This document shows positions 3,844-17,552 of a stretch of DNA of 17,552 nucleotides, piece after piece (the first letter of the stretch is position 1; every line of letters starts with the position of its first letter). The DNA lies in the NCBI RefSeq assembly GCF_006345805.1, contig NW_021824809.1, positions 1 through 17,552 of the forward strand, written 5' to 3'. This DNA is from Octopus sinensis. Taxonomy: Eukaryota. The notes beneath the pieces were generated by a model. The model saw only the letters and a program-made list of their open reading frames with translations. It had not been told where the DNA came from and did no database searches. A program made the translations under genes and the position numbers.

Positions 3844-4076
3844 TATTGCTTTACTACCCACAAGGGGCTAAACACAGAGGGGACAAACAAGGACAGACAA
3901 AGGGATTAAGCCGATTACATCGATCCCAGTGTGTAACTGGTACTTAATTTATCGACCCCGAAAGGATGAAAGGCAAAGTGGACCTCGGCGGAATTTGAAC
4001 TCAGAACGTAACGGCAGACGAAATATCGTTAAGCATTTCGCCCGGCGTGCTAACGTTTCTGCCAGCTCGCCGCCTT
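3844..4076 (-). mobile_element. tRNA-derived SINE (family 'A'), full length, inserted in a microsatellite
   Basis: The minus strand starts AAGGCGGCGAGCTGGCAGAAACGTTAGC (A-box-like TGGCAGAAACG) and carries a B-box-like GAGTTCAAATTCC. Homologous copies occur at 6496-7096 and 9195-9420. Confidence 0.9.
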
Positions 4077-4271: not shown

Positions 4272-4591
4272 AGGAATAGACTTCGTAGTCATAAAGCGAG
4301 AGAGATGAGTGAGAACCTGGCCACTGGGGGTGGTGTAACACACCATACTAATCATATCTGTCGGGCATGTGGAAGAGAGTGTAATTCGGCAGGTGGACTT
4401 AAACGACATGCAAAGGTACATGAAGCCCAGTTACAACTACAGCCGGCTATTACCGGTAAAGGTTTTAGCTGCCAATTCTGTACAAGACATTGTAGATCTT
4501 TAGCTGGGCTAAAAAGTCACATTCGATCACAGCACCAATAACAGTTAAGCTTCGTGCAATGGCCATACTCGATAACGAGGGGGCAGCCATA
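4272..4591 (+). mobile_element. 3' end of a non-LTR retrotransposon (probably RTE clade) with two C2H2 fingers; longest copy
   Basis: It encodes NRLRSHKAREMSENL...CRACGRECNSAGGLKRHAKVH (CX2CX12HX3H)...CQFCTRHCRSLAGLKSHIRSQH (CX2CX12HX4H) and a stop at 4539-4541, followed by a 50-bp 3' UTR. The CxxCGRxCxSxxGLxxHxRxH pattern resembles RTE ORF2 C-termini. The clade assignment is inference. Confidence 0.65.
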
Positions 4592-4817
4592 ATGAGCCAA
4601 TGAGGGAAACCTCTCTATATTAGGGTAGACCTGGCAGAAAAAGCAGCCAAACGTCCCTCCAAATCATACTCACTGACTTATGTGTGTATATATGCATGTA
4701 TGAACAAATGTGAGAAACATCTATATGTAAGACAGATCTGACAGAAATAGCAGCCAAAACTCCCTCAAATCGCCCCCTACTGTCTTCCGTATGTATGTAT
4801 GTATGCATGAGCCAATG

Positions 4818-5078
4818 TGGTGTAACACACCATACTAATCATATCTGTCGGGCATGTGGAAGAGAGTGTAATTCGGCAGGTGGACTTAAACGACATGCAA
4901 AGGTACATGAAGCCCAGTTACAACTACAGCCGGCTATTACCGGTAAAGGTTTTAGCTGCCAATTCTGTACAAGACATTGTAGATCTTTAGCTGGGCTAAA
5001 AAGTCACATTCGATCACAGCACCAATAACAGTTAAGCTTCGTGCAATGGCCATACTCGATAACGAGGGGGCAGCCATA
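4818..5078 (+). mobile_element. 5'-truncated copy of the same LINE 3' end, flanked by an 11-bp TSD
   Basis: Identical to 4331-4591. ATGAGCCAATG lies on both sides (4807-4817, 5079-5089). Confidence 0.8.
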
Positions 5079-5304
5079 ATGAGCCAATGAGGGAAACCTC
5101 TCTATATTAGGGTAGACCTGGCAGAAAAAGCAGCCAAACGTCCCTCCAAATCATACTCACTGACTTATGTGTGTATATATGCATGTATGAACAAATGTGA
5201 GAAACATCTATATGTAAGACAGATCTGACAGAAATAGCAGCCAAAACTCCCTCAAATCGCCCCCTACTGTCTTCCGTATGTATGTATGTATGCATGAGCC
5301 AATG

Positions 5305-5565
5305 TGGTGTAACACACCATACTAATCATATCTGTCGGGCATGTGGAAGAGAGTGTAATTCGGCAGGTGGACTTAAACGACATGCAAAGGTACATGAAGC
5401 CCAGTTACAACTACAGCCGGCTATTACCGGTAAAGGTTTTAGCTGCCAATTCTGTACAAGACATTGTAGATCTTTAGCTGGGCTAAAAAGTCACATTCGA
5501 TCACAGCACCAATAACAGTTAAGCTTCGTGCAATGGCCATACTCGATAACGAGGGGGCAGCCATA
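5305..5565 (+). mobile_element. 5'-truncated copy of the same LINE 3' end, flanked by an 11-bp TSD
   Basis: Identical to copy 2. ATGAGCCAATG lies at 5294-5304 and 5566-5576. Confidence 0.8.
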
Positions 5566-5788
5566 ATGAGCCAATGAGGGAAACCTCTCTATATTAGGGT
5601 AGACCTGCAGCAAAAAAGCAGCCAAACGTCCCTCCAAATCATACTGACTTATGTGTGTATATATGCATGTATGAACAAATGTGAGAAACATCTATATGTA
5701 AGACAGATCTGACAGAAATAGCAGCCAAAACTCCCTCAAATCGCCCCCTACTGTCTTCCGTATGTATGTATGTATGCATGAGCCAATG

Positions 5789-6049
5789 TGGTGTAACACA
5801 CCATACTAATCATATCTGTCGGGCATGTGGAAGAGAGTGTAATTCGGCAGGAGGACTTAAACGACATGCAAAGGTACATGAAGCCCAGTTACAACTACAG
5901 CCGGCTATTACCGGTAAAGGTTTTAGCTGCCAATTCTGTACAAGACATTGTAGATCTTTAGCTGGGCTAAAAAGTCACATTCGATCACAGCACCAATAAC
6001 AGTTAAGCTTCGTGCAATGGCCATACTCGATAACGAGGGAGCAGCCATA
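5789..6049 (+). mobile_element. Last LINE 3'-end copy, with a different 3' flank
   Basis: It has two substitutions relative to copies 1-3. It is followed by ATGTATATATG rather than the full 11-mer. Confidence 0.8.
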
Positions 6050-6052
6050 ATG

Positions 6053-6086
<34 letters not shown>

Positions 6087-6171
6087 TGTATGTTTGTGTG
6101 TGTGTGTGTGCGTATATGAGTATGTCTATAGCATAATAATATATGCATACATATGCATATGTATTATATAT

Positions 6172-6495: not shown

Positions 6496-7096
6496 TATTT
6501 CTTTACTACCCACAAGGGGCTAAACACAGAGAGGACAAACAAGGACAGACAAACTGATTAAGTCGATTATAACGACCCCAGTGCGTAACTGGTACTTAGT
6601 TTATCGACCCCGAAAGAATGAAAGGCAAAGTCGACCCCGGCGGAATTTGAACTCAGAACGCAGCGGCGGATGAAATACCTATTTCTTTACTACACCCAAG
6701 GAGTTAAACACAGAGGGGACAAACAAGGATAGACAAACTGATTAAGTCGATTATATCGACCCCAGTGCGTAACTGGTACTTATTTAATTGACCCCGAAAG
6801 GATGAAAGGCAAAGTCGACCTCGGCGGAATTTGAACTCAGAACGTAGCGGCGGATGAAATACCTATTTCTTTACTACACCCAAGGAGTTAAACACAGAGG
6901 GGACAAACAAGGATAGACAAACGGATTAAGTCGATTATAACGACCCCAGTGCGTAACTGGTACTTAGTTTATCGACCCCGAAAGAATGAAAGGCAAAGTC
7001 GACCCCGGCGGAATTTGAACTCAGAACGCAGCGGCGGACGAAATACCGCAAGGCATTTTGGCCGGCGTGCTAACGTTCCTGCCAGCTCGCCGCCTT
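6496..7096 (-). mobile_element. Head-to-tail trimer of SINE family A with a single 16-bp TSD
   Basis: Units are 6496-6679 and 6680-6863 (184 bp each, headless) and 6864-7096 (with head). ATGGTAATCCAATAAT lies at 6480-6495 and 7097-7112. Confidence 0.92.
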
Positions 7097-9080: not shown

Positions 9081-9094
9081 CACTTTTTTTTATT

Positions 9095-9490
9095 GGTGCA
9101 GGAGTGGCTGTGTGGTAAGTAGCTTGCTTACCAGCCACATGGTTCCGGGTTCAGTCCCACTGCGTGGCACTTTAGGCAAGTGTCTTCTACTATATATTTC
9201 TTTACAAGGGGCTAAACACAGAGGGGACAAACAAGGACAGACAAACGGATTAAGTCGATTACATCGACCCCAGTGCGAAACTGGTACTTTATTTATCGTA
9301 CCCGAAAGGATGGAAGGCAAAGTCGACCTCGGCGGAATTTGAACTCAGAACGTAACGACAGACGAAATACCGATAAGCATTTTGCCCGGCGCGCTAACGT
9401 TTCTGCCAGCTCGCCGCCTTAAGTGTCTTCTACTATAGCCTCGAGTCAACCAAAGCCTTGTGAGTGGAGTGGTAGACGGAAAGCAAGAGA
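9095..9490 (+). mobile_element. tRNA-derived SINE family 'B' (OR-type by recollection), 5' portion, interrupted by a family A SINE
   Basis: Head GGTGCAGGAGTGGCTGTGTGGTAAGTAGCTTGCTTACC with B-box-like GGTTCAGTCCC. Homologous to 10681-10823 on the minus strand. Confidence 0.85.
9195..9420 (-). mobile_element. Full-length SINE family A nested in a family B SINE, with a 17-bp TSD
   Basis: AAGTGTCTTCTACTATA lies at 9178-9194 and 9421-9437. Confidence 0.93.
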
Positions 9491-10458: not shown

Positions 10459-10823
10459 TACTCTCTTTACTCTTTTACTTGTTTCAGTCATTTGACTGCG
10501 GCCATGCTGGAGCACCGCCTTTAGTCGAGCAAATCGACCCCGGGACTTATTCTTTGTAAGCCTAGTACTTATTCTATCGGTCTCTTTTGTCGAACCGCTA
10601 AGTTACGAGGACGTAAACACACCAGCATCGGTTGTCAAGCAATGGTGGGAGGGACAAACACACACACACACACACACACATACGTCGGGCTTCTTTCAGT
10701 TTCCGTCTACCCAATCCACTCACAAGGCTTTGGTCGGCTCGAGGCTATAGTAGAAGACACTTGCCCAAGGTGCCACGCAGTGGGACTGAACCAGGAACCA
10801 TGTGGTTGGTAAGCAAGCTACTT
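10459..10823 (-). mobile_element. SINE family B body and tail; the head is displaced to 14045-14066
   Basis: It matches the 9095 copy from AAGTAGCTTGCTTACC onward and includes an internal (TG)n and a 3' tail of AAAGAGT-like repeats. It lacks the first ~22 nt. Confidence 0.88.
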
Positions 10824-11890
10824 TATTTTATCGAATTTGCCATAAAGGCAGTACATAGAGTAATGTAGCTTGCGGGCTGGACAAGGACATTAATGAGGTG
10901 AATGATAATGATACAAGTATAAGAACGGGAGAAGACGAAAAGCGCCCGCCGACTTTTGCTTCTCTAAAACATTGTTCTTTTAAAAACAGACACATATTGA
11001 GGTAATAACCCTCTTACAATTTGCAATATTTCTACTATTTTTGGACTAAGAAGTCCATTACAATTTAAAACACAAATAAGACACATATTGAGGCGATGAA
11101 CCCCTTACCTCATGTCCCCGATTAATTCTCTTGCGACCTGCAGGCATTCCTGCATCCGCAAATCGGGGTACCAAGAAAATATTCTATAATCCTCCTTTGG
11201 GAAGGAGTCTGGTGTGTGAAATAAATCCTCTTTTTCCTGTAGCAGAGCAGCCACCTGCGGAGGCCACTCTGGTCTGTCCATGCAAGTCGGTTCTATTAGA
11301 TCTCGACTCTGAAGGATATTTTCCACATAATTATCAATGGCCCCTCCACTGTGATAGAAGAACACATATCTTTCCACACCTGCATCGGGAGGGGCCTCCA
11401 CTCCCTCGGTCGGTGGCACACATCGTACCAACGAGGTTTCCATCTTCTCTCCCTCCGGTGACAATCCCACCAAAGGGGTTTCGAGGCATGCCGCCGCCGG
11501 TGATGCCCCGTTTTTCTTTTTTCTTTTCCTTTTTTCACGCCGCCTCGAGATCCATCAGTGGGCAACCATTATTGCCCACCTTCTTTTTGTTCCTTTTTTC
11601 AAGGGGGTTGCCTCCTCCTCGACTCTCTCCCTCTCTCCCTCCAATGAAGGAGCAGGGGGCTCCGTTGGGGGACCAGGGAGTTCTTCATCGATTAACTGTT
11701 CCAGGACCTTTGCCTGGTCCCGGCGACAGTTTTTCCTTATGTGTACTGATTCCAGGCACAGTTGACACTTGGGGGGGGGGGCATCCCTCAACCATCACCG
11801 GTTACTTGGAACCGGCCATTGTTAAAAAATCTGGTAAAACCAGATCTTTTGCTGATTGGGTCCATAGGGTCAATTTTTCACGAAAGACAT
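10824..11890 (-). mobile_element. 5'-truncated, pseudogenised ORF1-only non-LTR element (copy B)
   Basis: It reads LTLWTQSAKDLVLPDFLTMAGSK*PVMVEG (26/30 identical to copy A; stop at 11802-11804), then a poly-C frameshift, the zinc knuckle CQLCLESVHIRKNC and a C-terminal domain ending at the stop 11105-11107. Its 3' UTR is homologous to that of copy A. Confidence 0.8.
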
Positions 11891-11982
11891 GACTTCTTCA
11901 GTGTGCAACACAATCGCACATGCGCACACCGACAACAAAGAATCATGGGAAGTCTCAAAGCCTCATGGGAAGCGAGCTACTT

Positions 11983-14028
11983 TATTTCAATTATTTGCCA
12001 CTAGGGCATAACACAGAGGTAGCGGTAGCTCCGGGCTGGACACAGACATTAATGGATTATGGTAATGGTGGATGAAGATGGTGATGGGAGAAGTCAGAAA
12101 GCGCCCGTCGACTTTTGCTTCTCTAAAACAATGTTCTTTTTTCAATAGTTTTACAGAGTTCAAAAATTTCAAAAATTTCAAACAATTTCAAAAAATTACA
12201 AAATGTTCACATTACATGTTTTAGAGGAGGCAATGAACCTCCTCTTCCATATGTTACAGGGATGTTACATTGCCTAAGTGACCCGGCCGACCATTGCTCT
12301 TGCCTCATTGAGGCAATACTCGCTGGTCAGGCCGGAGTCCAGTGGTACAGTCTGGAAAGAGTCCGCCGGGCAGGAACTCACGATCCTGTGTAGATCAGCC
12401 CTTCCCACGACCCCCGCAGCTAACTGCGAAGGCCACTCGGGGCCTTCCACACAAGACCGGATTACCTCCCAATGTCCTCTCTTTCGCACTTTTCTTACGG
12501 CGTCTTCCACCTTTTTTCCCTTGAAAAAGAGGAGCACAAAATTTTCTACAAATAGTCCCTCAGGCAGCACACCCGCCTGAGAGGATCCGGGATACTCGGG
12601 AACCGCCGTCTGCGTGTAGCAATCCGCCGGCGGGGCTCCGTTTCTCTTCTTTTTTCTTTTCTTTTGGCCCTGGGCCACGGGAGGCTGAGGTTCCGGAGCT
12701 GTGCGCACCAGGTTCTCCTCTCCCGGAGCTTTCGGGTCCTTTTGTGGGTCGCCATTGCTTCCCACTCTTCTTTTTCTTTTGGCGGAGGGTTTTTCCCCCT
12801 CCTCGCTTTGTTTCTCTCCCTCCATTGGTGAGGCAGGGAGAGGCTCTAATATTAACTTCTCCAGGATCCTACTCTGGTTCCTGGAGCAGTTTTTCTTAAT
12901 ATGGCCGGTCTCCGAGCACAGGTGACACTTGGGGGCGCGTCCCTCTAGCATCACCGGATACTTGGAACCGGCCATCTTTAGGAAGTCCGGCAAAACCAGA
13001 CTCTTGGCCGACTGGGTCCACAGAGTTAAAGTAGCTTTTCCTCCTTCCCAGTTAGCCGCAGGCTGCATTCTTACGTTCAGGATCTTGGCGCTACCACCAC
13101 TCAGACCCCGGCGGATGGAATCTTCCACCCAGTCGGGCTCAAAGCCGGGCGGCAGGCCGCAGACCCATAAACGTATCAATTTTTCCCCCTTATAGCTTGG
13201 GAGAAACAGAATCTCTTTGCCCTCAGTGGGCTTACTTGCGAAATCGCAAGCTGCTTTAGGAGAGTCAAACAGCAACCAAATCGTTGCGTATTTGGCTCCC
13301 CGTTGAATGTGTTTAACGGCTGGCATATAGTCTGCCAGCTCGTTCATAATTGTGTCTTTCGGAAAGACCATTATGGTGTCGAGAGACTTCGAATATGTCC
13401 TCAGCACCACTGTCTTTTCCTCAAGTTCGTTCAAATATTTTTTGGGAGGTGTTAATTCCCACACTGTGAAATTCCTTGCCATAACTTAAGAAAAACAGTT
13501 CAAAATGTTACAAAATAAATTAGACACAGAAAGGAGAATGAAAAAAGCAACAGAAGGGAAGAAATAAAATTAAAATGGCAATTCAAAGAAAGTTTTTTAC
13601 AAATGAATGATAGGCAGAGAAAGAGAGTTCAAATTCAGACAAAGGAATTTTTTCACTTTTTCGGCCAAAAATTGTACTCCAGGCCAAGTATATGGTTGGT
13701 ACAACACCTTGGTAAATGATCCTTGGTAAATCCGTAGATAACACAACGATAATTTCAAAAATAATTTTTGTAGACGGACTACGCCGCCTCAAAAACACAA
13801 TTTTCTTCACACCCGACAACAGGCAGAAAAATTATATCCGGAGCAAAATGGAGCCTTATTATCTGCTAAAAATATTTAATGCTAAAATACATTAATGCAA
13901 GTAATAAAGCTTCACTTCGCTCGCAAAAATACAAAATTCCTACCTGCAGTCGAGTCGAAAGTTCAACAATTCACGTTGAAACAACGTGGCATCCGGAGCA
14001 GCAAAATAACACGTCTAACTCAGACGAA
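11983..14028 (-). mobile_element. Apparently complete 2.05-kb ORF1-only non-LTR element (copy A; Tx1/L1-like, HAL1-like)
   Basis: 5' UTR of about 546 bp, an intact 402-aa ORF1 and a 3' UTR of about 290 bp ending at AATAAA. No endonuclease or RT sequence was seen between ORF1 and the terminus. Confidence 0.75.
12274..13482 (-). CDS. Gag-like ORF1 protein of a Tx1/L1-type non-LTR element (RRM-like N-terminus, CCHC knuckle, basic linker, unknown C-terminal domain)
   Basis: Intact 402-aa ORF. It contains CHLCSETGHIKKNC (CX2CX4HX4C, 12886-12927) preceded by RLWVCGLPPGF (RRM-like) and Lys/Arg-rich stretches (KRKRR, KKRKKKR). The RRM call is by eye. Confidence 0.8.
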   Translation of the reverse strand: MARNFTVWELTPPKKYLNELEEKTVVLRTYSKSLDTIMVFPKDTIMNELADYMPAVKHIQRGAKYATIWLLFDSPKAACDFASKPTEGKEILFLPSYKGEKLIRLWVCGLPPGFEPDWVEDSIRRGLSGGSAKILNVRMQPAANWEGGKATLTLWTQSAKSLVLPDFLKMAGSKYPVMLEGRAPKCHLCSETGHIKKNCSRNQSRILEKLILEPLPASPMEGEKQSEEGEKPSAKRKRRVGSNGDPQKDPKAPGEENLVRTAPEPQPPVAQGQKKRKKKRNGAPPADCYTQTAVPEYPGSSQAGVLPEGLFVENFVLLFFKGKKVEDAVRKVRKRGHWEVIRSCVEGPEWPSQLAAGVVGRADLHRIVSSCPADSFQTVPLDSGLTSEYCLNEARAMVGRVT

Positions 14029-14066
14029 GGTTAGCGAGCTACTTACCACACAGCCACTCCTGCGCC
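14029..14066 (-). mobile_element. Displaced 5' head of the family B SINE plus a duplicated target
   Basis: The minus strand reads GGCGCAGGAGTGGCTGTGTGGT-AAGTAGCTCGCTAACC, which is exactly the part missing from 10459-10823. Confidence 0.88.
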
Positions 14067-14304
14067 TATGGGCATGGGAACCTTTTTCGAGAAGCAGATG
14101 ACATGAGACATGGTTCCTCATCTGGTGGGCAGCATTACTAAAAAAAGAAAGTTTCAAAGTACATTTTTTATTCGTTTGTTAGGCATGCTATTCAGAGAGC
14201 CTTTCAGGCAGAGTCGATCCTCAAGTTCAACATTTCACTCCATTTTTGTTAATCTGAAGTAACGACAAAAGTGAAAGGGAAGTGTGAAACTCAAGGATCG
14301 ATTT

Positions 14305-14344
14305 ACACGTACACACACAAGCACACAAACATGGATAAGCACAT

Positions 14345-14377
<33 letters not shown>

Positions 14378-14383
14378 TGGATA

Positions 14384-14426
<43 letters not shown>

Positions 14427-15042
14427 GCACACAAACATGGATAAGCACATGCACACACACACACACACACACACAAGCACACAAACATGGATAAGCACAT
14501 GCACACACACACACACACACACACAAACATGGATAAGCACACACACACACACACACACACACAAGCACACAAACATGGATAAGCACATGCACACACACAC
14601 AAACATGGATAAGCACATGCACACACACACACACACACACACACAAACATGGATAAGCACACACACACACACACACACACACACAAGCGCACAAACATGG
14701 ATAAGCACATGCACACACACACACACACACACACACACAAGCGCACAAACATGGATAAGCACATGCACACACACACACACACACACACAAACATGGATAA
14801 GCACATGCACACACACACACACACACACACACAAACATGGATAAGCACATGCACACACACACACACACACACAAGCACACAAACATGGATAAGCACATGC
14901 ACACACACACACACACACACAAGCACACAAACATGGATAAGCACATGCACACACACACAACACACACACACCACACAAACATGGATAAGCACATGCACAC
15001 ACACACACACACACACAAGCACACAAACATGGATAAGCACAT

Positions 15043-15077
<35 letters not shown>

Positions 15078-15428
15078 TGGATAAGCACATGCACACACAC
15101 ACACACACACACAAGCACACAAACATGGATAAGCACATGCACAACACACACACACACACACACACAACACAAGCACACAAACATGGATAAGCACATGCAC
15201 ACACACACACACACACACACAAACATGGATAAGCACATGCACACACACACACACACACACAAGCACACAAACATGGATAAGCACATGCACACACACACAC
15301 ACACACACACACCACACAAACATGGATAAGCACATGCACACACACACACACACACACACACAAGCACACAAACATGGATAAGCACATGCACACACACACA
15401 CACACACACAAGCACACAAACATGGATA

Positions 15429-15466
<38 letters not shown>

Positions 15467-15857
15467 TGGATAAGCACATGCACACACACACACACACACA
15501 CAAGCACACAAACATGGATAAGCACATGCACACACACACACACACACACAAGCACACAAACATGGATAAGCACATGCACACACACACACACACACAACAA
15601 GCACACAAACATGGATAAGCACACACACACACACACACACAAGCACACAAACATGGATAAGCACATGCACACACACACACACACACACACACACAAGCAC
15701 ACAAACATGGATAAGCACATGCACACACACACACACACACACACAAACATGGATAAGCACATGCACACACACACACACACACACAAGCACACAAACATGG
15801 ATAAGCACATGCACACACACACACACACACACAGCACACAAACATGGATAAGCACAT

Positions 15858-15889
<32 letters not shown>

Positions 15890-16003
15890 GCACACAAACA
15901 TGGATAAGCACATGCACACACACACACACACACACACAAACATGGATAAGCACATGCACACACACACACACACACACAAGCACACAAACATGGATAAGCA
16001 CAT

Positions 16004-16035
<32 letters not shown>

Positions 16036-17178
16036 GCACACAAACATGGATAAGCACATGCACACACACACACACACACACAACAAACATGGATAAGCAC
16101 ATGCACACACACAACACACACACACAAGCACACAAACATGGATAAGCACATGCACACACACACACACACACACAAGCACACAAACATGGATAAGCACATG
16201 CACACACACACACACACACAAGCACACAAACATGGATAAGCACATGCACACACACACACACACACACAAACATGGATAAGCACATGCACACACACACACA
16301 CACACACACAAGCACACAAACATGGATAAGCACATGCACACACACACACACACACACAAGCACACAAACATGGATAAGCACATGCACACACACACACACA
16401 CACACAAGCACACAAACATGGATAAGCACATGCACACACACACACACACACACACAAACATGGATAAGCACATGCACACACACACACACACACACAAGCA
16501 CACAAACTTGGATAAGCACACACACACACACCACACACACACAAGCACACAAACATGGATAAGCACATTCACACACACACACACACACACAAACATGGAT
16601 AAGCACACACCACACCACACACACACACCACAAGCACACAAACATGGATAAGCACACACACACACACACACACACAAGCACACAACATGGATAAGCACAT
16701 TCACACACACACACACACACACAACATGGATAAGCACATGCACACACACACACACACACACAAGCACACAAACATGGATAAGCACATTCACACACACACA
16801 CACACACAAACATGGATAAGCACATGCACACACACACACACACACACACAAACATGGATAAGCACATGCACACACACACACACACACACACACACAAGCA
16901 CACAAACATGGATAAGCACATTCACACACACACACACACAAACATGGATAAGCACATGCACACACACACACACACACACACACAAGCACACAAACATGGA
17001 TAAGCACACACACACACACACACACACACAAACATGGATAAGCACATGCACACACACACACACACACACACACAAACATGGATAAGCACATGCACACACA
17101 CACACACACACACACAAACATGGATAAGCACATGCACACACACACACACACACACACACACAACATGGATAAGCACAT

Positions 17179-17211
<33 letters not shown>

Positions 17212-17552
17212 TGGATAAGCACACACACACACACACACACACAAGCGCACAAACATGGATAAGCACATGCACACACACATACACACACACACAAGCGCAC
17301 AAACATGGATAAGCACATGCACAACACACACACACACACACACACACCAACACACACACACACATGGATAAGCACACACACACACACACACACACAAGCA
17401 CACAAACATGGATAAGCACATGCACACACACACACACACAACACACACAAACATGGATAAGCACATGCACACACACAACACACACCACACACAGCACACA
17501 AACTTGGATAAGCACATGCACACACACACACACACACACACAAGCACACAAA
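14305..17552. repeat. Composite minisatellite: [AGCACAC]AAACATGGATAAGCACATG + variable (CA)n, running off the window
   Basis: The core recurs every ~25-55 bp over more than 3.2 kb (roughly 70 units by estimate). Confidence 0.97.

What the first reader, a model, noticed from the sequence alone, without database searches (positions are those of the whole stretch)
10808..14066. Candidate new system: ORF1-only half-LINEs that repeatedly target one site in a SINE head
A family B SINE is split right after its A-box, with the head at 14045-14066 and the body at 10459-10823. The 3.2-kb insert holds two related but strongly diverged elements in tandem, each with ORF1 running directly into a shared-type 3' UTR and no ORF2. 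The target 16-mer occurs three times, on the minus strand as AAGTAGCTCGCTAACC (14029-14044), AAGTAGCTCGCTTCCC (11967-11982) and AAGTAGCTTGCTTACC (10808-10823), pairwise 14/16 identical, in the pattern T-A-T-B-T. Established precedents are sequence-specific Tx1-clade elements (including Xenopus Tx1L/Tx2L targeting other transposons) and ORF1-only HAL1 derivatives of L1. The combination, a non-autonomous coding element hyperparasitising a tRNA-derived SINE at a fixed position, is not something I recognise as described. Target specificity is inferred from a single locus.
Basis: partly seen in the sequence, partly recalled or inferred. Interest (0 to 1): 0.85.

Follow-up and report, generated by a model that had tools for sequence, protein, structure and literature searches.

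The report
SINE-targeting, ORF1-only LINE derivative in octopus
Two copies of a small octopus retrotransposon that keeps only its RNA-binding ORF1 gene sit back to back at one exact spot inside another mobile element (a SINE), and copies in three other octopus loci use the same spot, so this is a real site-specific, non-autonomous LINE derivative, a new combination of two known habits and not a new kind of system.

Summary
On the minus strand a SINE is split after its A-box, and the 16-mer AAGTAGCTYGCTNNCC occurs three times in the order T-A-T-B-T.

- **Element A:** 2046 nt, with an intact 402-aa ORF1 made of two RRM-like domains, a CCHC knuckle and a private C-terminal domain.
- **Element B:** 1143 nt, a decayed and internally deleted relative, about 75% identical to A.
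- **No ORF2:** neither copy has one, and there is no ORF2 remnant anywhere in the window.

Three further loci carry the family at the same SINE position and in the same orientation: two in O. sinensis and one in O. bimaculoides. The O. bimaculoides copy was met by chance. It is a 138-nt 5'-truncated fragment in which T occurs only once, so T is SINE target sequence, not the element's own terminus.

Distant ORF1 relatives sit upstream of APE-RT-zinc-finger ORF2s in full LINEs of the L1/Tx1 group. Those LINEs share the 3'-terminal motif. Individual members form tandem arrays, sit in an (ATT)n microsatellite, or make a perfect 16-bp duplication.

The best reading is an ORF1-only, trans-mobilised, SINE-specific LINE derivative that inserted twice in succession. 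The autonomous partner was not found and the clade was not shown by RT phylogeny. Each ingredient has precedents (Tx1-Mar, SINEU-3, HAL1, HeT-A), so this is a new variant of a known kind.

The parts
14045..14067 (-). 5' head of the interrupted SINE (family B), with an A-box-like TGGCTGTGTGGT
   Evidence: It is 95% identical to the head of the uninterrupted copy at 9092 and to heads in L002 and L004.
14029..14044 (-). T1: upstream copy of the target-site duplication, AAGTAGCTCGCTAACC
   Evidence: It shares the private C at position 9 with T2, and the first 12 nt are identical to T2.
11983..14028 (-). Element A: full-length ORF1-only element, 2046 nt (5'UTR 14028-13483, ORF1 13482-12274, 3'UTR 12273-11983)
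   Evidence: It has an intact 402-aa ORF. Its ORF1 is homologous to the ORF1 of full LINEs. Its 5' start and 3'UTR blocks are shared with ORF2-bearing relatives. No ORF2 is present.
12274..13482 (-). ORF1 of A: two RRM-like domains (about aa 14-180), a CCHC knuckle (185-200), a disordered basic linker (224-305) and a family-private C-terminal alpha/beta domain (314-401)
   Evidence: Pfam zf-CCHC hit. AlphaFold2 model with mean pLDDT 75. The best Foldseek matches are tandem-RRM proteins. dN/dS is 0.21 against the L001 copy.
11967..11982 (-). T2: middle copy of the target 16-mer, AAGTAGCTCGCTTCCC, sandwiched between A and B
   Evidence: The GCTTCCC variant also exists in an uninterrupted SINE copy (L085:3040).
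10824..11966 (-). Element B: older, degenerate, internally deleted copy, 1143 nt (ORF1 remnants 11876-11108, 3'UTR 11107-10824)
   Evidence: It is 74-76% identical to A in three blocks and has frameshifts and stop codons. Its 5' end is loosely alignable with the 5' ends of the L001 and L002 copies.
10808..10823 (-). T3: downstream copy of the target 16-mer, AAGTAGCTTGCTTACC, contiguous with the SINE body
10459..10807 (-). Rest of the interrupted SINE, with a B-box-like GGTTCAGTCCC, an internal (TG)n and the 3' tail
   Evidence: It matches SINE copies in L002, L004, L085, L086 and L087 at 83-96% identity.
9092..9482 (+). Control: a second SINE-B copy whose head is uninterrupted across the target site. 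It is itself split further downstream by a different SINE at 9195-9420.
   Evidence: A 17-bp duplication, AAGTGTCTTCTACTATA, flanks the inner SINE.

Best explanation
A and B are two members of a low-copy octopus family of non-autonomous LINE derivatives. Members keep the 5'UTR, ORF1 and 3'UTR of an L1/Tx1-group LINE and have lost ORF2.

They are copied by target-primed reverse transcription (TPRT), using the endonuclease and reverse transcriptase of a related autonomous LINE supplied in trans. That step is inferred, and the partner has not been found.

The endonuclease nicks one site in the head of a tRNA-type SINE, between GGT and AAGTAGCT just after the A-box, always in the sense orientation. 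Full-length insertions duplicate 12-16 bp of target (T).

The duplication rebuilds the target on both sides of the insert, so a second element can land next to the first. B entered the SINE first. A later entered the upstream T copy, which gives head-T-A-T-B-T-body. This order is inferred from two things: T1 and T2 share a private C at position 9, and A is intact while B is decayed.

ORF1p is an RNA-binding protein with tandem RRM-like domains and a zinc knuckle. It is presumably kept because it coats the element's own RNA in cis and helps it compete for the partner's ORF2p, as proposed for HAL1 and HeT-A.
For: **Structure in the window**
- The T-A-T-B-T layout is confirmed.
- An uninterrupted SINE copy shows that T is SINE sequence.

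**Recurrence of the site: five insertion events, all in the same orientation**
- Events 1 and 2 are A and B in the window.
- Event 3 is L001 and event 4 is L002, both in O. sinensis on different chromosomes. Both have the SINE head up to GCTTCC directly followed by the element's 5' end.
- Event 5 is L085 in O. bimaculoides, found by chance. It reads head..GGTAAG | 138-nt 5'-truncated 3'UTR | AAGTAGCTTGCTTATC plus the SINE body.

**LINE ancestry**
- ORF1-A matches ORF1 proteins at E 1e-10 to 1e-14. These lie directly upstream of APE + RT + zf-RVT ORF2s in L003, L004 and L084; in L005 and L006, which come from another host, tblastn finds an equally distant ORF1 upstream of APE + RT ORF2s.
- The L004 ORF2 best matches human L1 ORF2p in the PDB, at 2e-71.
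- A and B share two 3' features with those LINEs. One is the terminal motif CCYTWGTGGSNAATAA, shared with L003, L004 and L084. The other is a T-rich block, matching 25/27 between A and L004.

**Behaviour of the lineage**
- L004 and L006 are tandem arrays at about 99% identity.
- L003 is flanked on both sides by (ATT)n.
- L084 has a perfect 16-bp duplication.

**ORF1-only as an inherited state**
- A, B and L002 all go from a homologous ORF1 C-terminus into a short 3'UTR of about 145-290 nt.
- dN/dS between A and L001 is 0.21.

**Published precedents**
- Tx1-clade elements target other transposons, make a 16-bp duplication, and form tandem insertions that sandwich it (PMC4494074).
- ORF1-only non-autonomous LINEs are known: HeT-A, HAL1 and Ag-Sponge (PMC5786205).
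Against: - Only five events could be examined, because no octopus genome could be searched by DNA.
- L001 and L002 show only the 5' junction. L001 is cut inside ORF1. L002 ends in (TG)24 with no SINE body downstream.
- No ORF2-bearing element with this target, or with a close ORF1 (above 30% identity), was found. The ORF2-bearing relatives use other sites.
- The 5'-truncated L085 copy has almost no duplication, so the top-strand break is not fixed.
- The 3'UTR shows no significant predicted fold (z = -0.42).
- The tRNA origin of the SINE rests on A-box and B-box resemblance only. ARAGORN and Rfam find nothing.
Confidence: 0.72

Rival explanations
1. The SINE head is carried by the element and is not its target. 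It would have been acquired by 5' transduction from a master copy sitting in a SINE, or by template switching onto SINE RNA, as with the U1/U2 heads of some crocodilian Tx1 families. L001 and L002 would then be ordinary insertions of a 'headed' RNA and would say nothing about target choice.
For: L001 and L002 have the head but no SINE body downstream. L002's element ends close to its normal 3' end and is followed by (TG)24 and unrelated DNA. L001, L002 and T2 share the GCTTCC(C) variant rather than the commoner GCTTACC. Tx1 families with small-RNA heads are published (PMC4494074).
Against: In the window, B is preceded by T2 alone with no head, and T3 continues in register into the SINE body. 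In L085 a 5'-truncated copy cannot have brought a head, yet it lies between head and body of one SINE with the same 3' junction. The GCTTCCC variant also occurs in an uninterrupted SINE copy (L085:3040). No duplication flanks 'head plus element' in L002. This rival could hold for L002 alone without affecting the main conclusion.
Confidence: 0.1
2. The family is normally autonomous, with ORF1 and ORF2, and the copies seen here are deletion derivatives that do not themselves propagate.
For: Only three copies with a preserved ORF1-to-3'UTR transition were seen. Internally deleted LINE copies are common: B has an internal deletion, and L086 holds a LINE deleted from the APE domain to the C-terminus.
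Against: A, B and L002 differ by 25-30% at the DNA level yet share the same ORF1 C-terminus followed by the 3'UTR. The ORF2 loss therefore predates their divergence, and the deleted form kept spreading. ORF1 stayed under purifying selection. A is a young insertion with an intact ORF and a 12/12 identical core duplication. None of the ORF2 hits examined by locus has a close ORF1 beside it.
Confidence: 0.08
3. The ORF1 is a domesticated host gene, since one copy is annotated as LOC115225585 in O. sinensis, and the flanking repeats are incidental.
For: dN/dS of 0.2 is also what a host gene would show. NCBI annotates P0001 as a gene.
Against: The copies lie at non-orthologous places. Each is bounded by the same SINE junctions. 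Most are decayed (B, L002, and L001 with a C-terminal frameshift), and L085 holds a 5'-truncated fragment, which is a LINE hallmark. The UTRs are homologous to LINE UTRs.
Confidence: 0.03
4. The tandem arose by local duplication, ectopic recombination or misassembly, not by two insertions.
For: Related LINE arrays in L004 and L006 are about 99% identical between units, which could reflect array amplification rather than repeated insertion.
Against: A and B are only about 75% identical and have different 5' regions and different internal structure, so one is not a copy of the other. Each is bounded by T exactly as the single insertions are in other loci.
Confidence: 0.02

Closest known systems
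Tx1 clade of the L1 group: Xenopus Tx1L/Tx2L, and crocodilian Tx1-Mar, Tx1-9_AMi and Tx1-8_Crp, which target Mariner, Harbinger and LTR elements
   Same: The ORF2 of relatives has APE, RT and a C-terminal zinc finger and is closest to L1 ORF2p. ORF1 has RRM-like domains plus a CCHC knuckle. Insertion is sequence-specific and oriented, and it goes into another transposon. The duplication is about 16 bp. Tandem insertions sandwich the duplication (PMC4494074).
   Different: The element has no ORF2 at all. The target is a tRNA-type SINE; no paper describing one turned up in the held library. Clade membership could not be shown by an RT tree.
SINEU-3 with Tx1-Mar in crocodilians
   Same: It is a non-autonomous passenger that shows its partner's target specificity and piles up in tandem with the 16-bp duplication in between.
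   Different: SINEU-3 is a short non-coding SINE with a U2-derived head. The octopus element is 2 kb and encodes a selected ORF1p.
HAL1 (half-L1) of mammals
   Same: It is an L1-group derivative that keeps the 5'UTR, ORF1 and 3'UTR, lacks ORF2 and spreads in trans (PMC5786205).
   Different: As far as I know, HAL1 is not site-specific. From general knowledge, its ORF1p is the coiled-coil/RRM/CTD type without a zinc knuckle. It also belongs to a different host lineage.
HeT-A of Drosophila telomeres
   Same: It is ORF1(gag)-only, non-autonomous and target-restricted, forms head-to-tail arrays, and relies on a related element's RT.
   Different: It belongs to the Jockey clade. By established knowledge of HeT-A (not tested here), it targets chromosome ends without endonuclease cleavage of a sequence and serves a host function.
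Ag-Sponge (CR1-derived, Anopheles)
   Same: It is another ORF1-only bipartite non-autonomous LINE.
   Different: It belongs to the CR1 clade, and I know of no site specificity for it.

Membership tests
Non-LTR retrotransposon (LINE) derivative | Encodes a protein homologous to LINE ORF1p | tested here: met
   phmmer hits at E 1e-10 to 1e-14. Their genes sit directly upstream of APE/RT ORF2 in L003, L004 and L084; L005 and L006 carry a tblastn-detected ORF1 homolog in the same position. The predicted fold is tandem RRM plus a knuckle.
Non-LTR retrotransposon (LINE) derivative | Insertion signatures of target-primed reverse transcription: target-site duplication and 5'-truncated copies with an intact 3' end | tested here: met
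   T1/T2/T3 form the duplication. L085 holds a 138-nt 5'-truncated copy with the same 3' junction. The full LINE relative in L084 has a perfect 16-bp duplication.
Non-LTR retrotransposon (LINE) derivative | Own reverse transcriptase and endonuclease | tested here: not met
   tblastn with two related ORF2 proteins finds nothing in the window, nor inside the L001 and L002 copies. The element is therefore non-autonomous.
Tx1 clade (L1 group) | RT domain groups with Tx1 in an RT phylogeny (for example RTclass1) | not testable with these tools
   The element has no RT. The L004 relative's ORF2 best matches human L1 ORF2p (2e-71) and carries zf-RVT, which places it in the L1 group. No Tx1 reference set was available.
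Tx1 clade (L1 group) | Sequence-specific insertion into a repeated target | tested here: met
   Five events at one SINE position, all in the same orientation. Two relatives form tandem arrays (L004, L006) and one sits in (ATT)n (L003).
ORF1-only bipartite non-autonomous LINEs (HAL1 / HeT-A / Ag-Sponge type) | 5'UTR + ORF1 + 3'UTR without ORF2, inherited by diverged copies rather than a private deletion | tested here: met
   A, B and L002 share the transition from a homologous ORF1 C-terminus to the 3'UTR, at 25-30% DNA divergence.
ORF1-only bipartite non-autonomous LINEs (HAL1 / HeT-A / Ag-Sponge type) | An identified autonomous partner sharing the 3' end | tested here: inconclusive
   ORF2-bearing relatives share the terminal motif and a T-rich block. 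Their ORF1 is only about 23-25% identical, and they use other targets.
HAL1 proper | Derived from mammalian L1, with a coiled-coil/RRM/CTD ORF1p | tested here: not met
   The host is a cephalopod, and ORF1p has tandem RRM-like domains plus a CCHC knuckle. It is an analogue of HAL1, not a member.
tRNA-derived SINE (the target) | Head recognisable as a tRNA, with A and B boxes | tested here: inconclusive
   A-box-like TGGCTGTGTGG and B-box-like GGTTCAGTCCC are visible. ARAGORN and Rfam report no tRNA. The literature classes octopus SINEs as tRNA-Core and tRNA-Deu (PMC8967140).

The most novel reading that the evidence does not exclude
The ORF1-only lineage may keep its site specificity partly through its own RNA. 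Transcripts would begin in the SINE head and read through into the downstream T. These co-transcribed target sequences would pair with the nicked SINE at both ends of the cDNA. The element could then borrow ORF2p from several related LINEs with looser or different specificity and still land at one SINE position. That would make it an RNA-guided hyperparasite of a SINE. L002, which has a head but no body, would be an off-target product of such a headed transcript.
Probability: 0.1. Interest if true: 0.75.

Novelty: new variant of a known kind. Interest (0 to 1): 0.5.

Why it matters
The family joins two strategies otherwise seen together, among the precedents named here, only in HeT-A of Drosophila telomeres. 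One is site-specific insertion into a harmless, hugely abundant target, here a SINE that is a major component of octopus repeats. The other is survival as an ORF1-only passenger on another LINE's enzymes.

If a genome-wide census confirms it, three things follow.
- A tRNA-type SINE joins the list of Tx1-type targets.
- There is a natural case for asking why ORF1p is retained when ORF2 is lost.
- Annotators get a practical rule for cephalopod genomes. Gene models such as LOC115225585 (P0001) and the chimeric K02A2.6-like model (P0033) contain this transposon, and a SINE split at this position marks an insertion of this family.

The family does not change how LINE biology is understood.

Tried and rejected
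- **Large upstream ORF (14227-17547).** It looked like a possible ORF2. It is a translation of a CA-rich minisatellite.
- **Closer protein relatives.** The word-index search with ORF1-A gave one hit, P0001. The search with B's C-terminal piece gave none. The exhaustive search added only relatives at 20-30% identity, plus a 38-residue exon in P0033.
- **Metagenome scans.** A scan for the ORF1 found nothing. A scan for the 3' junction gave 70 chance matches, none containing the SINE or the element.
- **C-terminal domain as an ORF2 fragment.** tblastn against six loci found no similarity outside the family.
- **SINE body downstream of the L001 and L002 copies.** Sensitive blastn found none.
- **tRNA detection in the SINE.** ARAGORN and Rfam were negative. 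The three weak Rfam hits are below threshold and were ignored.
- **3'UTR fold.** It does not differ from shuffled sequence.
- **Link to ZCCHC3-type ORF1 RNA-binding domains of fish LINEs.** hhalign gave only 60% probability, E 8.5e-5. This is suggestive and was not relied on.
- **Contexts fetched for other distant ORF1 hits, none of which helped identify a partner:**
  - L007 is a contig that breaks off at the start of an ORF2.
  - L008-L013 are about 1.1-1.7-kb transcripts.
  - L086 holds an internally deleted LINE.
  - L087 shows no ORF2 within 10 kb.
  - In L085, the P0027 element runs into an assembly gap.
- **A multi-fragment protein profile for the exhaustive search.** Abandoned in favour of the single protein, because fragment rows could have removed profile columns.


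Full report
**1. What is in the window**

Read on the minus strand, the order is as follows.
- SINE head: 14066-14045, GGCGCAGGAGTGGCTGTGTGGT.
- T1: 14044-14029, AAGTAGCTCGCTAACC.
- Element A: 14028-11983, 2046 nt.
- T2: 11982-11967, AAGTAGCTCGCTTCCC.
- Element B: 11966-10824, 1143 nt.
- T3: 10823-10808, AAGTAGCTTGCTTACC.
- The rest of the SINE, down to 10459.

With up to three mismatches, the 16-mer occurs in the window only at these three junctions and once inside an uninterrupted SINE copy at 9117. That copy reads GGTAAGTAGCTTGCTTACCAGCCACATGG without a break. T is therefore normal SINE sequence, and head, one T and body rebuild a normal SINE. Three copies of a 16-mer placed exactly at three element boundaries cannot be chance.

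The 1106-aa 'ORF' upstream (14227-17547) is a translated CA-rich minisatellite, not an ORF2.

**2. The two elements**

*Element A.*
- It has a 546-nt 5'UTR, an intact 402-aa ORF1 (13482-12274) and a 291-nt 3'UTR.
- The only Pfam hit is a CCHC zinc knuckle at residues 185-200.
- An AlphaFold2 model (mean pLDDT 75) shows two confident RRM-like domains (about 14-180), the knuckle, a disordered basic linker (224-305) and a small alpha/beta C-terminal domain (314-401).
- The best structural matches are tandem-RRM proteins such as UP1, NONO and Prp24.

*Element B.*
- It is 74-76% identical to A in three blocks and lacks about the first 150 codons of ORF1.
- It needs at least one frameshift and carries stop codons.
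- Its ORF1 C-terminus (...CLQVARELIGDMR*) is homologous to that of A (...CLNEARAMVGRVT*), and so is its 284-nt 3'UTR.
- B is not simply 5'-truncated. Its first ~90 nt lie outside the blocks that match A and align loosely with the 5' ends of the L001 and L002 copies. That fits an internal deletion.

tblastn with two related ORF2 proteins finds nothing in the window.

**3. Other copies**

The only close protein relative in 5.8 billion clusters is P0001, Octopus sinensis LOC115225585, at 59% identity. The exhaustive search added a 38-residue exon in the chimeric O. sinensis model P0033. The window is therefore from an octopus; the species was not determined.

*L001 (O. sinensis).* The element's 5'UTR starts directly after ...GGCATGGCTGTGTGGTAAGTAGCTTGCTTCC.

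*L002 (O. sinensis, a different chromosome).* The 5'UTR starts directly after ...GGCGTTGCCGTGTGGTAAGAAGTTTGCTTCC.

In both, this is SINE positions 1-39 in the same orientation, and the element's 5' end aligns with that of A. Neither has a SINE body downstream. L001 is cut inside ORF1 at about 10975. L002 ends ...CTTATGGATATTTGAAT, followed by (TG)24.

*L085 (O. bimaculoides).* This locus decides the question. It was fetched for an unrelated protein, P0027. On its minus strand it reads:
- ...AGGCGCAGGAGTGGCTGTGTGGTAAG
- then a 138-nt 5'-truncated 3'UTR, 79% identical to B and 76% to A, ending ...TATGGCAAATTAAAATGAAATA
- then AAGTAGCTTGCTTATC AACCACATGGTTCC... and the full SINE body.

The 3' junction is identical to those of A and B. 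T occurs only once and belongs to the SINE. A 5'-truncated copy is a LINE hallmark.

*Totals.* This makes five insertion events at four loci, across the window's genome, O. sinensis and O. bimaculoides. All are at one SINE position and in one orientation. Given a hit in this SINE, the chance of the same position within 3 nt and the same strand is below 1% per event.

*SINE variants.* In the roughly 180 kb of octopus DNA held, ten other SINE heads are uninterrupted. One of them (L085:3040) carries the GCTTCCC variant seen in T2, so that variant is a natural SINE allele.

**4. Ancestry**

The distant ORF1 relatives (20-30% identity, E down to 2e-14) are from cephalopods: O. vulgaris, O. bimaculoides, O. 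sinensis and Argonauta hians. Several belong to full LINEs.

- **L004 (O. vulgaris):** three tandem units of about 5273 bp at 99% identity. Each has ORF1 followed by an ORF2; the first unit's ORF2 has all three Pfam domains, Exo_endo_phos, RVT_1 and zf-RVT.
- **L003 (O. sinensis):** a decayed ORF1 plus ORF2 element, flanked on both sides by (ATT)n.
- **L084 (Argonauta):** ORF1 plus an ORF2 52% identical to L004's, with a perfect 16-bp duplication, TCTTCAACTTATGTTT.
- **L005 and L006 (an ENA assembly of another host):** the same gene order, with L006 again a tandem array of period 6432 bp.

The L004 ORF2 best matches human L1 ORF2p among solved structures, at 2e-71 over residues 3-868. R2 proteins are far behind. 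This is the L1/Tx1 group. L1-Tx1 elements are reported in coleoid genomes (PMC8967140).

A and B share several features with these LINEs.
- A 3'-terminal motif: GCCCTAGTGGCAAATAA in A, GCCTTTATGGCAAAT in B, CCCCTTGTGGGTAAATAA in L004, GCCCTTGTGGCCAATAA in L003 and GCCCTTGTGGCGAATAA in L084.
- A T-rich block: TTTGAAATTTTTGAAATTTTTGAACTC in A against TTTGTAAATTTTTGAAATTTTTAAACTC in L004.
- A's 5' start, TTCGTCTGAGTT, resembles TTTTTTGTCTGAGTT near the 5' ends in L005 and L006, and TTTTTTGTCTGAAATAG in L004.

The element is thus a LINE with its ORF2 removed. The C-terminal ~100 residues of ORF1 (PEWP motif) are private to the family and are not a piece of ORF2.

**5. Is ORF1-only the propagating form?**

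A, B and L002 differ by 25-30% in DNA. All three pass from a homologous ORF1 C-terminus into a short homologous 3'UTR. The deletion therefore predates their divergence.

Between A and the L001 copy, dN is 0.29, dS is 1.40 and dN/dS is 0.21 over 269 codons. ORF1 was under purifying selection while the ORF1-only form spread.

A looks young. Its ORF is intact, and the first 12 nt of T1 and T2 are identical, including a private C at position 9 where T3 and the SINE consensus have T. This also orders the events: B entered the SINE first, and A later entered the upstream T. For that second event the downstream context was B, not SINE. The sequence that is recognised therefore probably lies in the head plus T (inference).

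**6. Mechanism**

*Shown.*
- A fixed 3' junction.
- A 12-16-bp duplication for full-length copies.
- Almost no duplication for the truncated copy, where the 5' end joins at an AAG microhomology.
- Tandem stacking with the duplication in between.

*Inferred.* A related autonomous LINE's endonuclease nicks GGT^AAGTAGCT, and its RT copies the element RNA, recognised through the shared 3' end. ORF1p acts in cis on its own RNA.

*Not found.* The partner itself. None of the ORF2-bearing relatives seen uses this site.

**7. Rivals**

*The head travels with the element.* This fits L002 and has a published parallel in the U1/U2 heads on crocodilian Tx1 families (PMC4494074). It fails for B, which has no head in front of it, and for L085.

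*Private deletions of an autonomous family.* This fails on the shared architecture of diverged copies, although the sample is small.

*Host gene.* This fails on multiple non-orthologous, decayed and truncated copies with transposon termini.

*Local duplication or misassembly.* This fails because A and B are only about 75% identical.

**8. Comparison and novelty**

- Tx1-clade elements that target other transposons, make a 16-bp duplication and stack in tandem around it are described. So is a non-coding passenger, SINEU-3, that shares its partner's target (PMC4494074).
- ORF1-only non-autonomous LINEs are described in three clades: HeT-A, HAL1 and Ag-Sponge (PMC5786205). HeT-A is also target-restricted.
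- Searches of the held literature found no SINE-targeting LINE and no ORF1-only Tx1-type element in cephalopods.

This is a new variant of a known kind, of moderate interest to transposon specialists. It is also useful for cephalopod genome annotation, where copies are currently annotated as genes.

Noticed in passing
window 14236-17552: A CA-rich minisatellite of more than 3.3 kb runs to the window's end. Its units look like CACACAAACATGGATAAGCACATG(CA)n, with periods of about 42-54 bp. It produces spurious ORFs of up to 1106 aa on the minus strand.
   Followed up: partly
window 4330-6087: A tandem repeat of 487 bp in four units. The first three are 100% identical over the 300 nt compared, and the fourth is 90% identical.
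   Followed up: no
window 9195-9420, also 3844-4076 and 6496-7096: A second SINE family of about 230 nt has five copies in the window. Three of them overlap in a 184-bp tandem register at 6496-7096. The copy at 9195-9420 is inserted in a SINE-B copy in the opposite orientation, with a 17-bp duplication AAGTGTCTTCTACTATA. SINE-in-SINE nesting with 16-17-bp duplications is therefore common here.
   Followed up: partly
window 13940-13949 and 13483-13500; L001 about 9585 and 9990; L002 about 15838 and 16383: In the three copies that retain it (A, L001, L002), the 5'UTR has a splice-donor-like CAG|GTAGG or AAG|GTAGG about 85-100 nt from the 5' end. It also has a polypyrimidine tract followed by AG just before the ORF1 ATG, or about 50 nt before it in L002. 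The 5'UTR may contain a retained intron of about 450 nt.
   Followed up: no
window 12274-12540 (ORF1 residues about 314-401): A C-terminal alpha/beta domain with a conserved PEWP motif. It is predicted with pLDDT of about 80 and is found only in this family (A, B, L001, L002). It is absent from the ORF1 of ORF2-bearing relatives, and its function is unknown.
   Followed up: partly
L004 4445-19184 (O. vulgaris OX597840.1): Three or more tandem units of a 5.27-kb LINE at 99% identity; the first unit is full-length with both ORFs open. Units are joined by short, similar sequences (AACCCGAC / ACACTGATA / ACACCCGAT before AGGACGTTAC). The target was not identified, and the array ends in an assembly gap.
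   Followed up: partly
L003 9720-15370 (O. sinensis CM016872.1): A decayed LINE of the same lineage is flanked on both sides by (ATT)n. This points to a microsatellite-specific member, analogous to the Kibi and Koshi elements of fish.
   Followed up: partly
L008-L013 (Logan assemblies of SRR11869384-94): The same 294-aa ORF1-like protein (P0007) appears on contigs of about 1.1-1.7 kb assembled independently in six runs. It is followed by an A/C-rich 560-nt tail and no ORF2. This may be another expressed ORF1-only element or a domesticated gene. The host species is unknown.
   Followed up: no
L087 10001-10774 (O. vulgaris) and L085 6738-7657 (O. bimaculoides): Another ORF1 subfamily (P0014 and P0027, about 26-31% identical to ORF1-A). 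L087 shows no ORF2 within 10 kb downstream, and L085 runs into an assembly gap. Loss of ORF2 may have happened more than once in this lineage.
   Followed up: partly
L002 10001-36638 and L001 10001-10846: NCBI gene models include pieces of this transposon. P0033 ('K02A2.6-like') is a chimera of an element exon and an integrase fragment. P0001 (LOC115225585) is an ORF1 copy truncated by a frameshift.
   Followed up: yes
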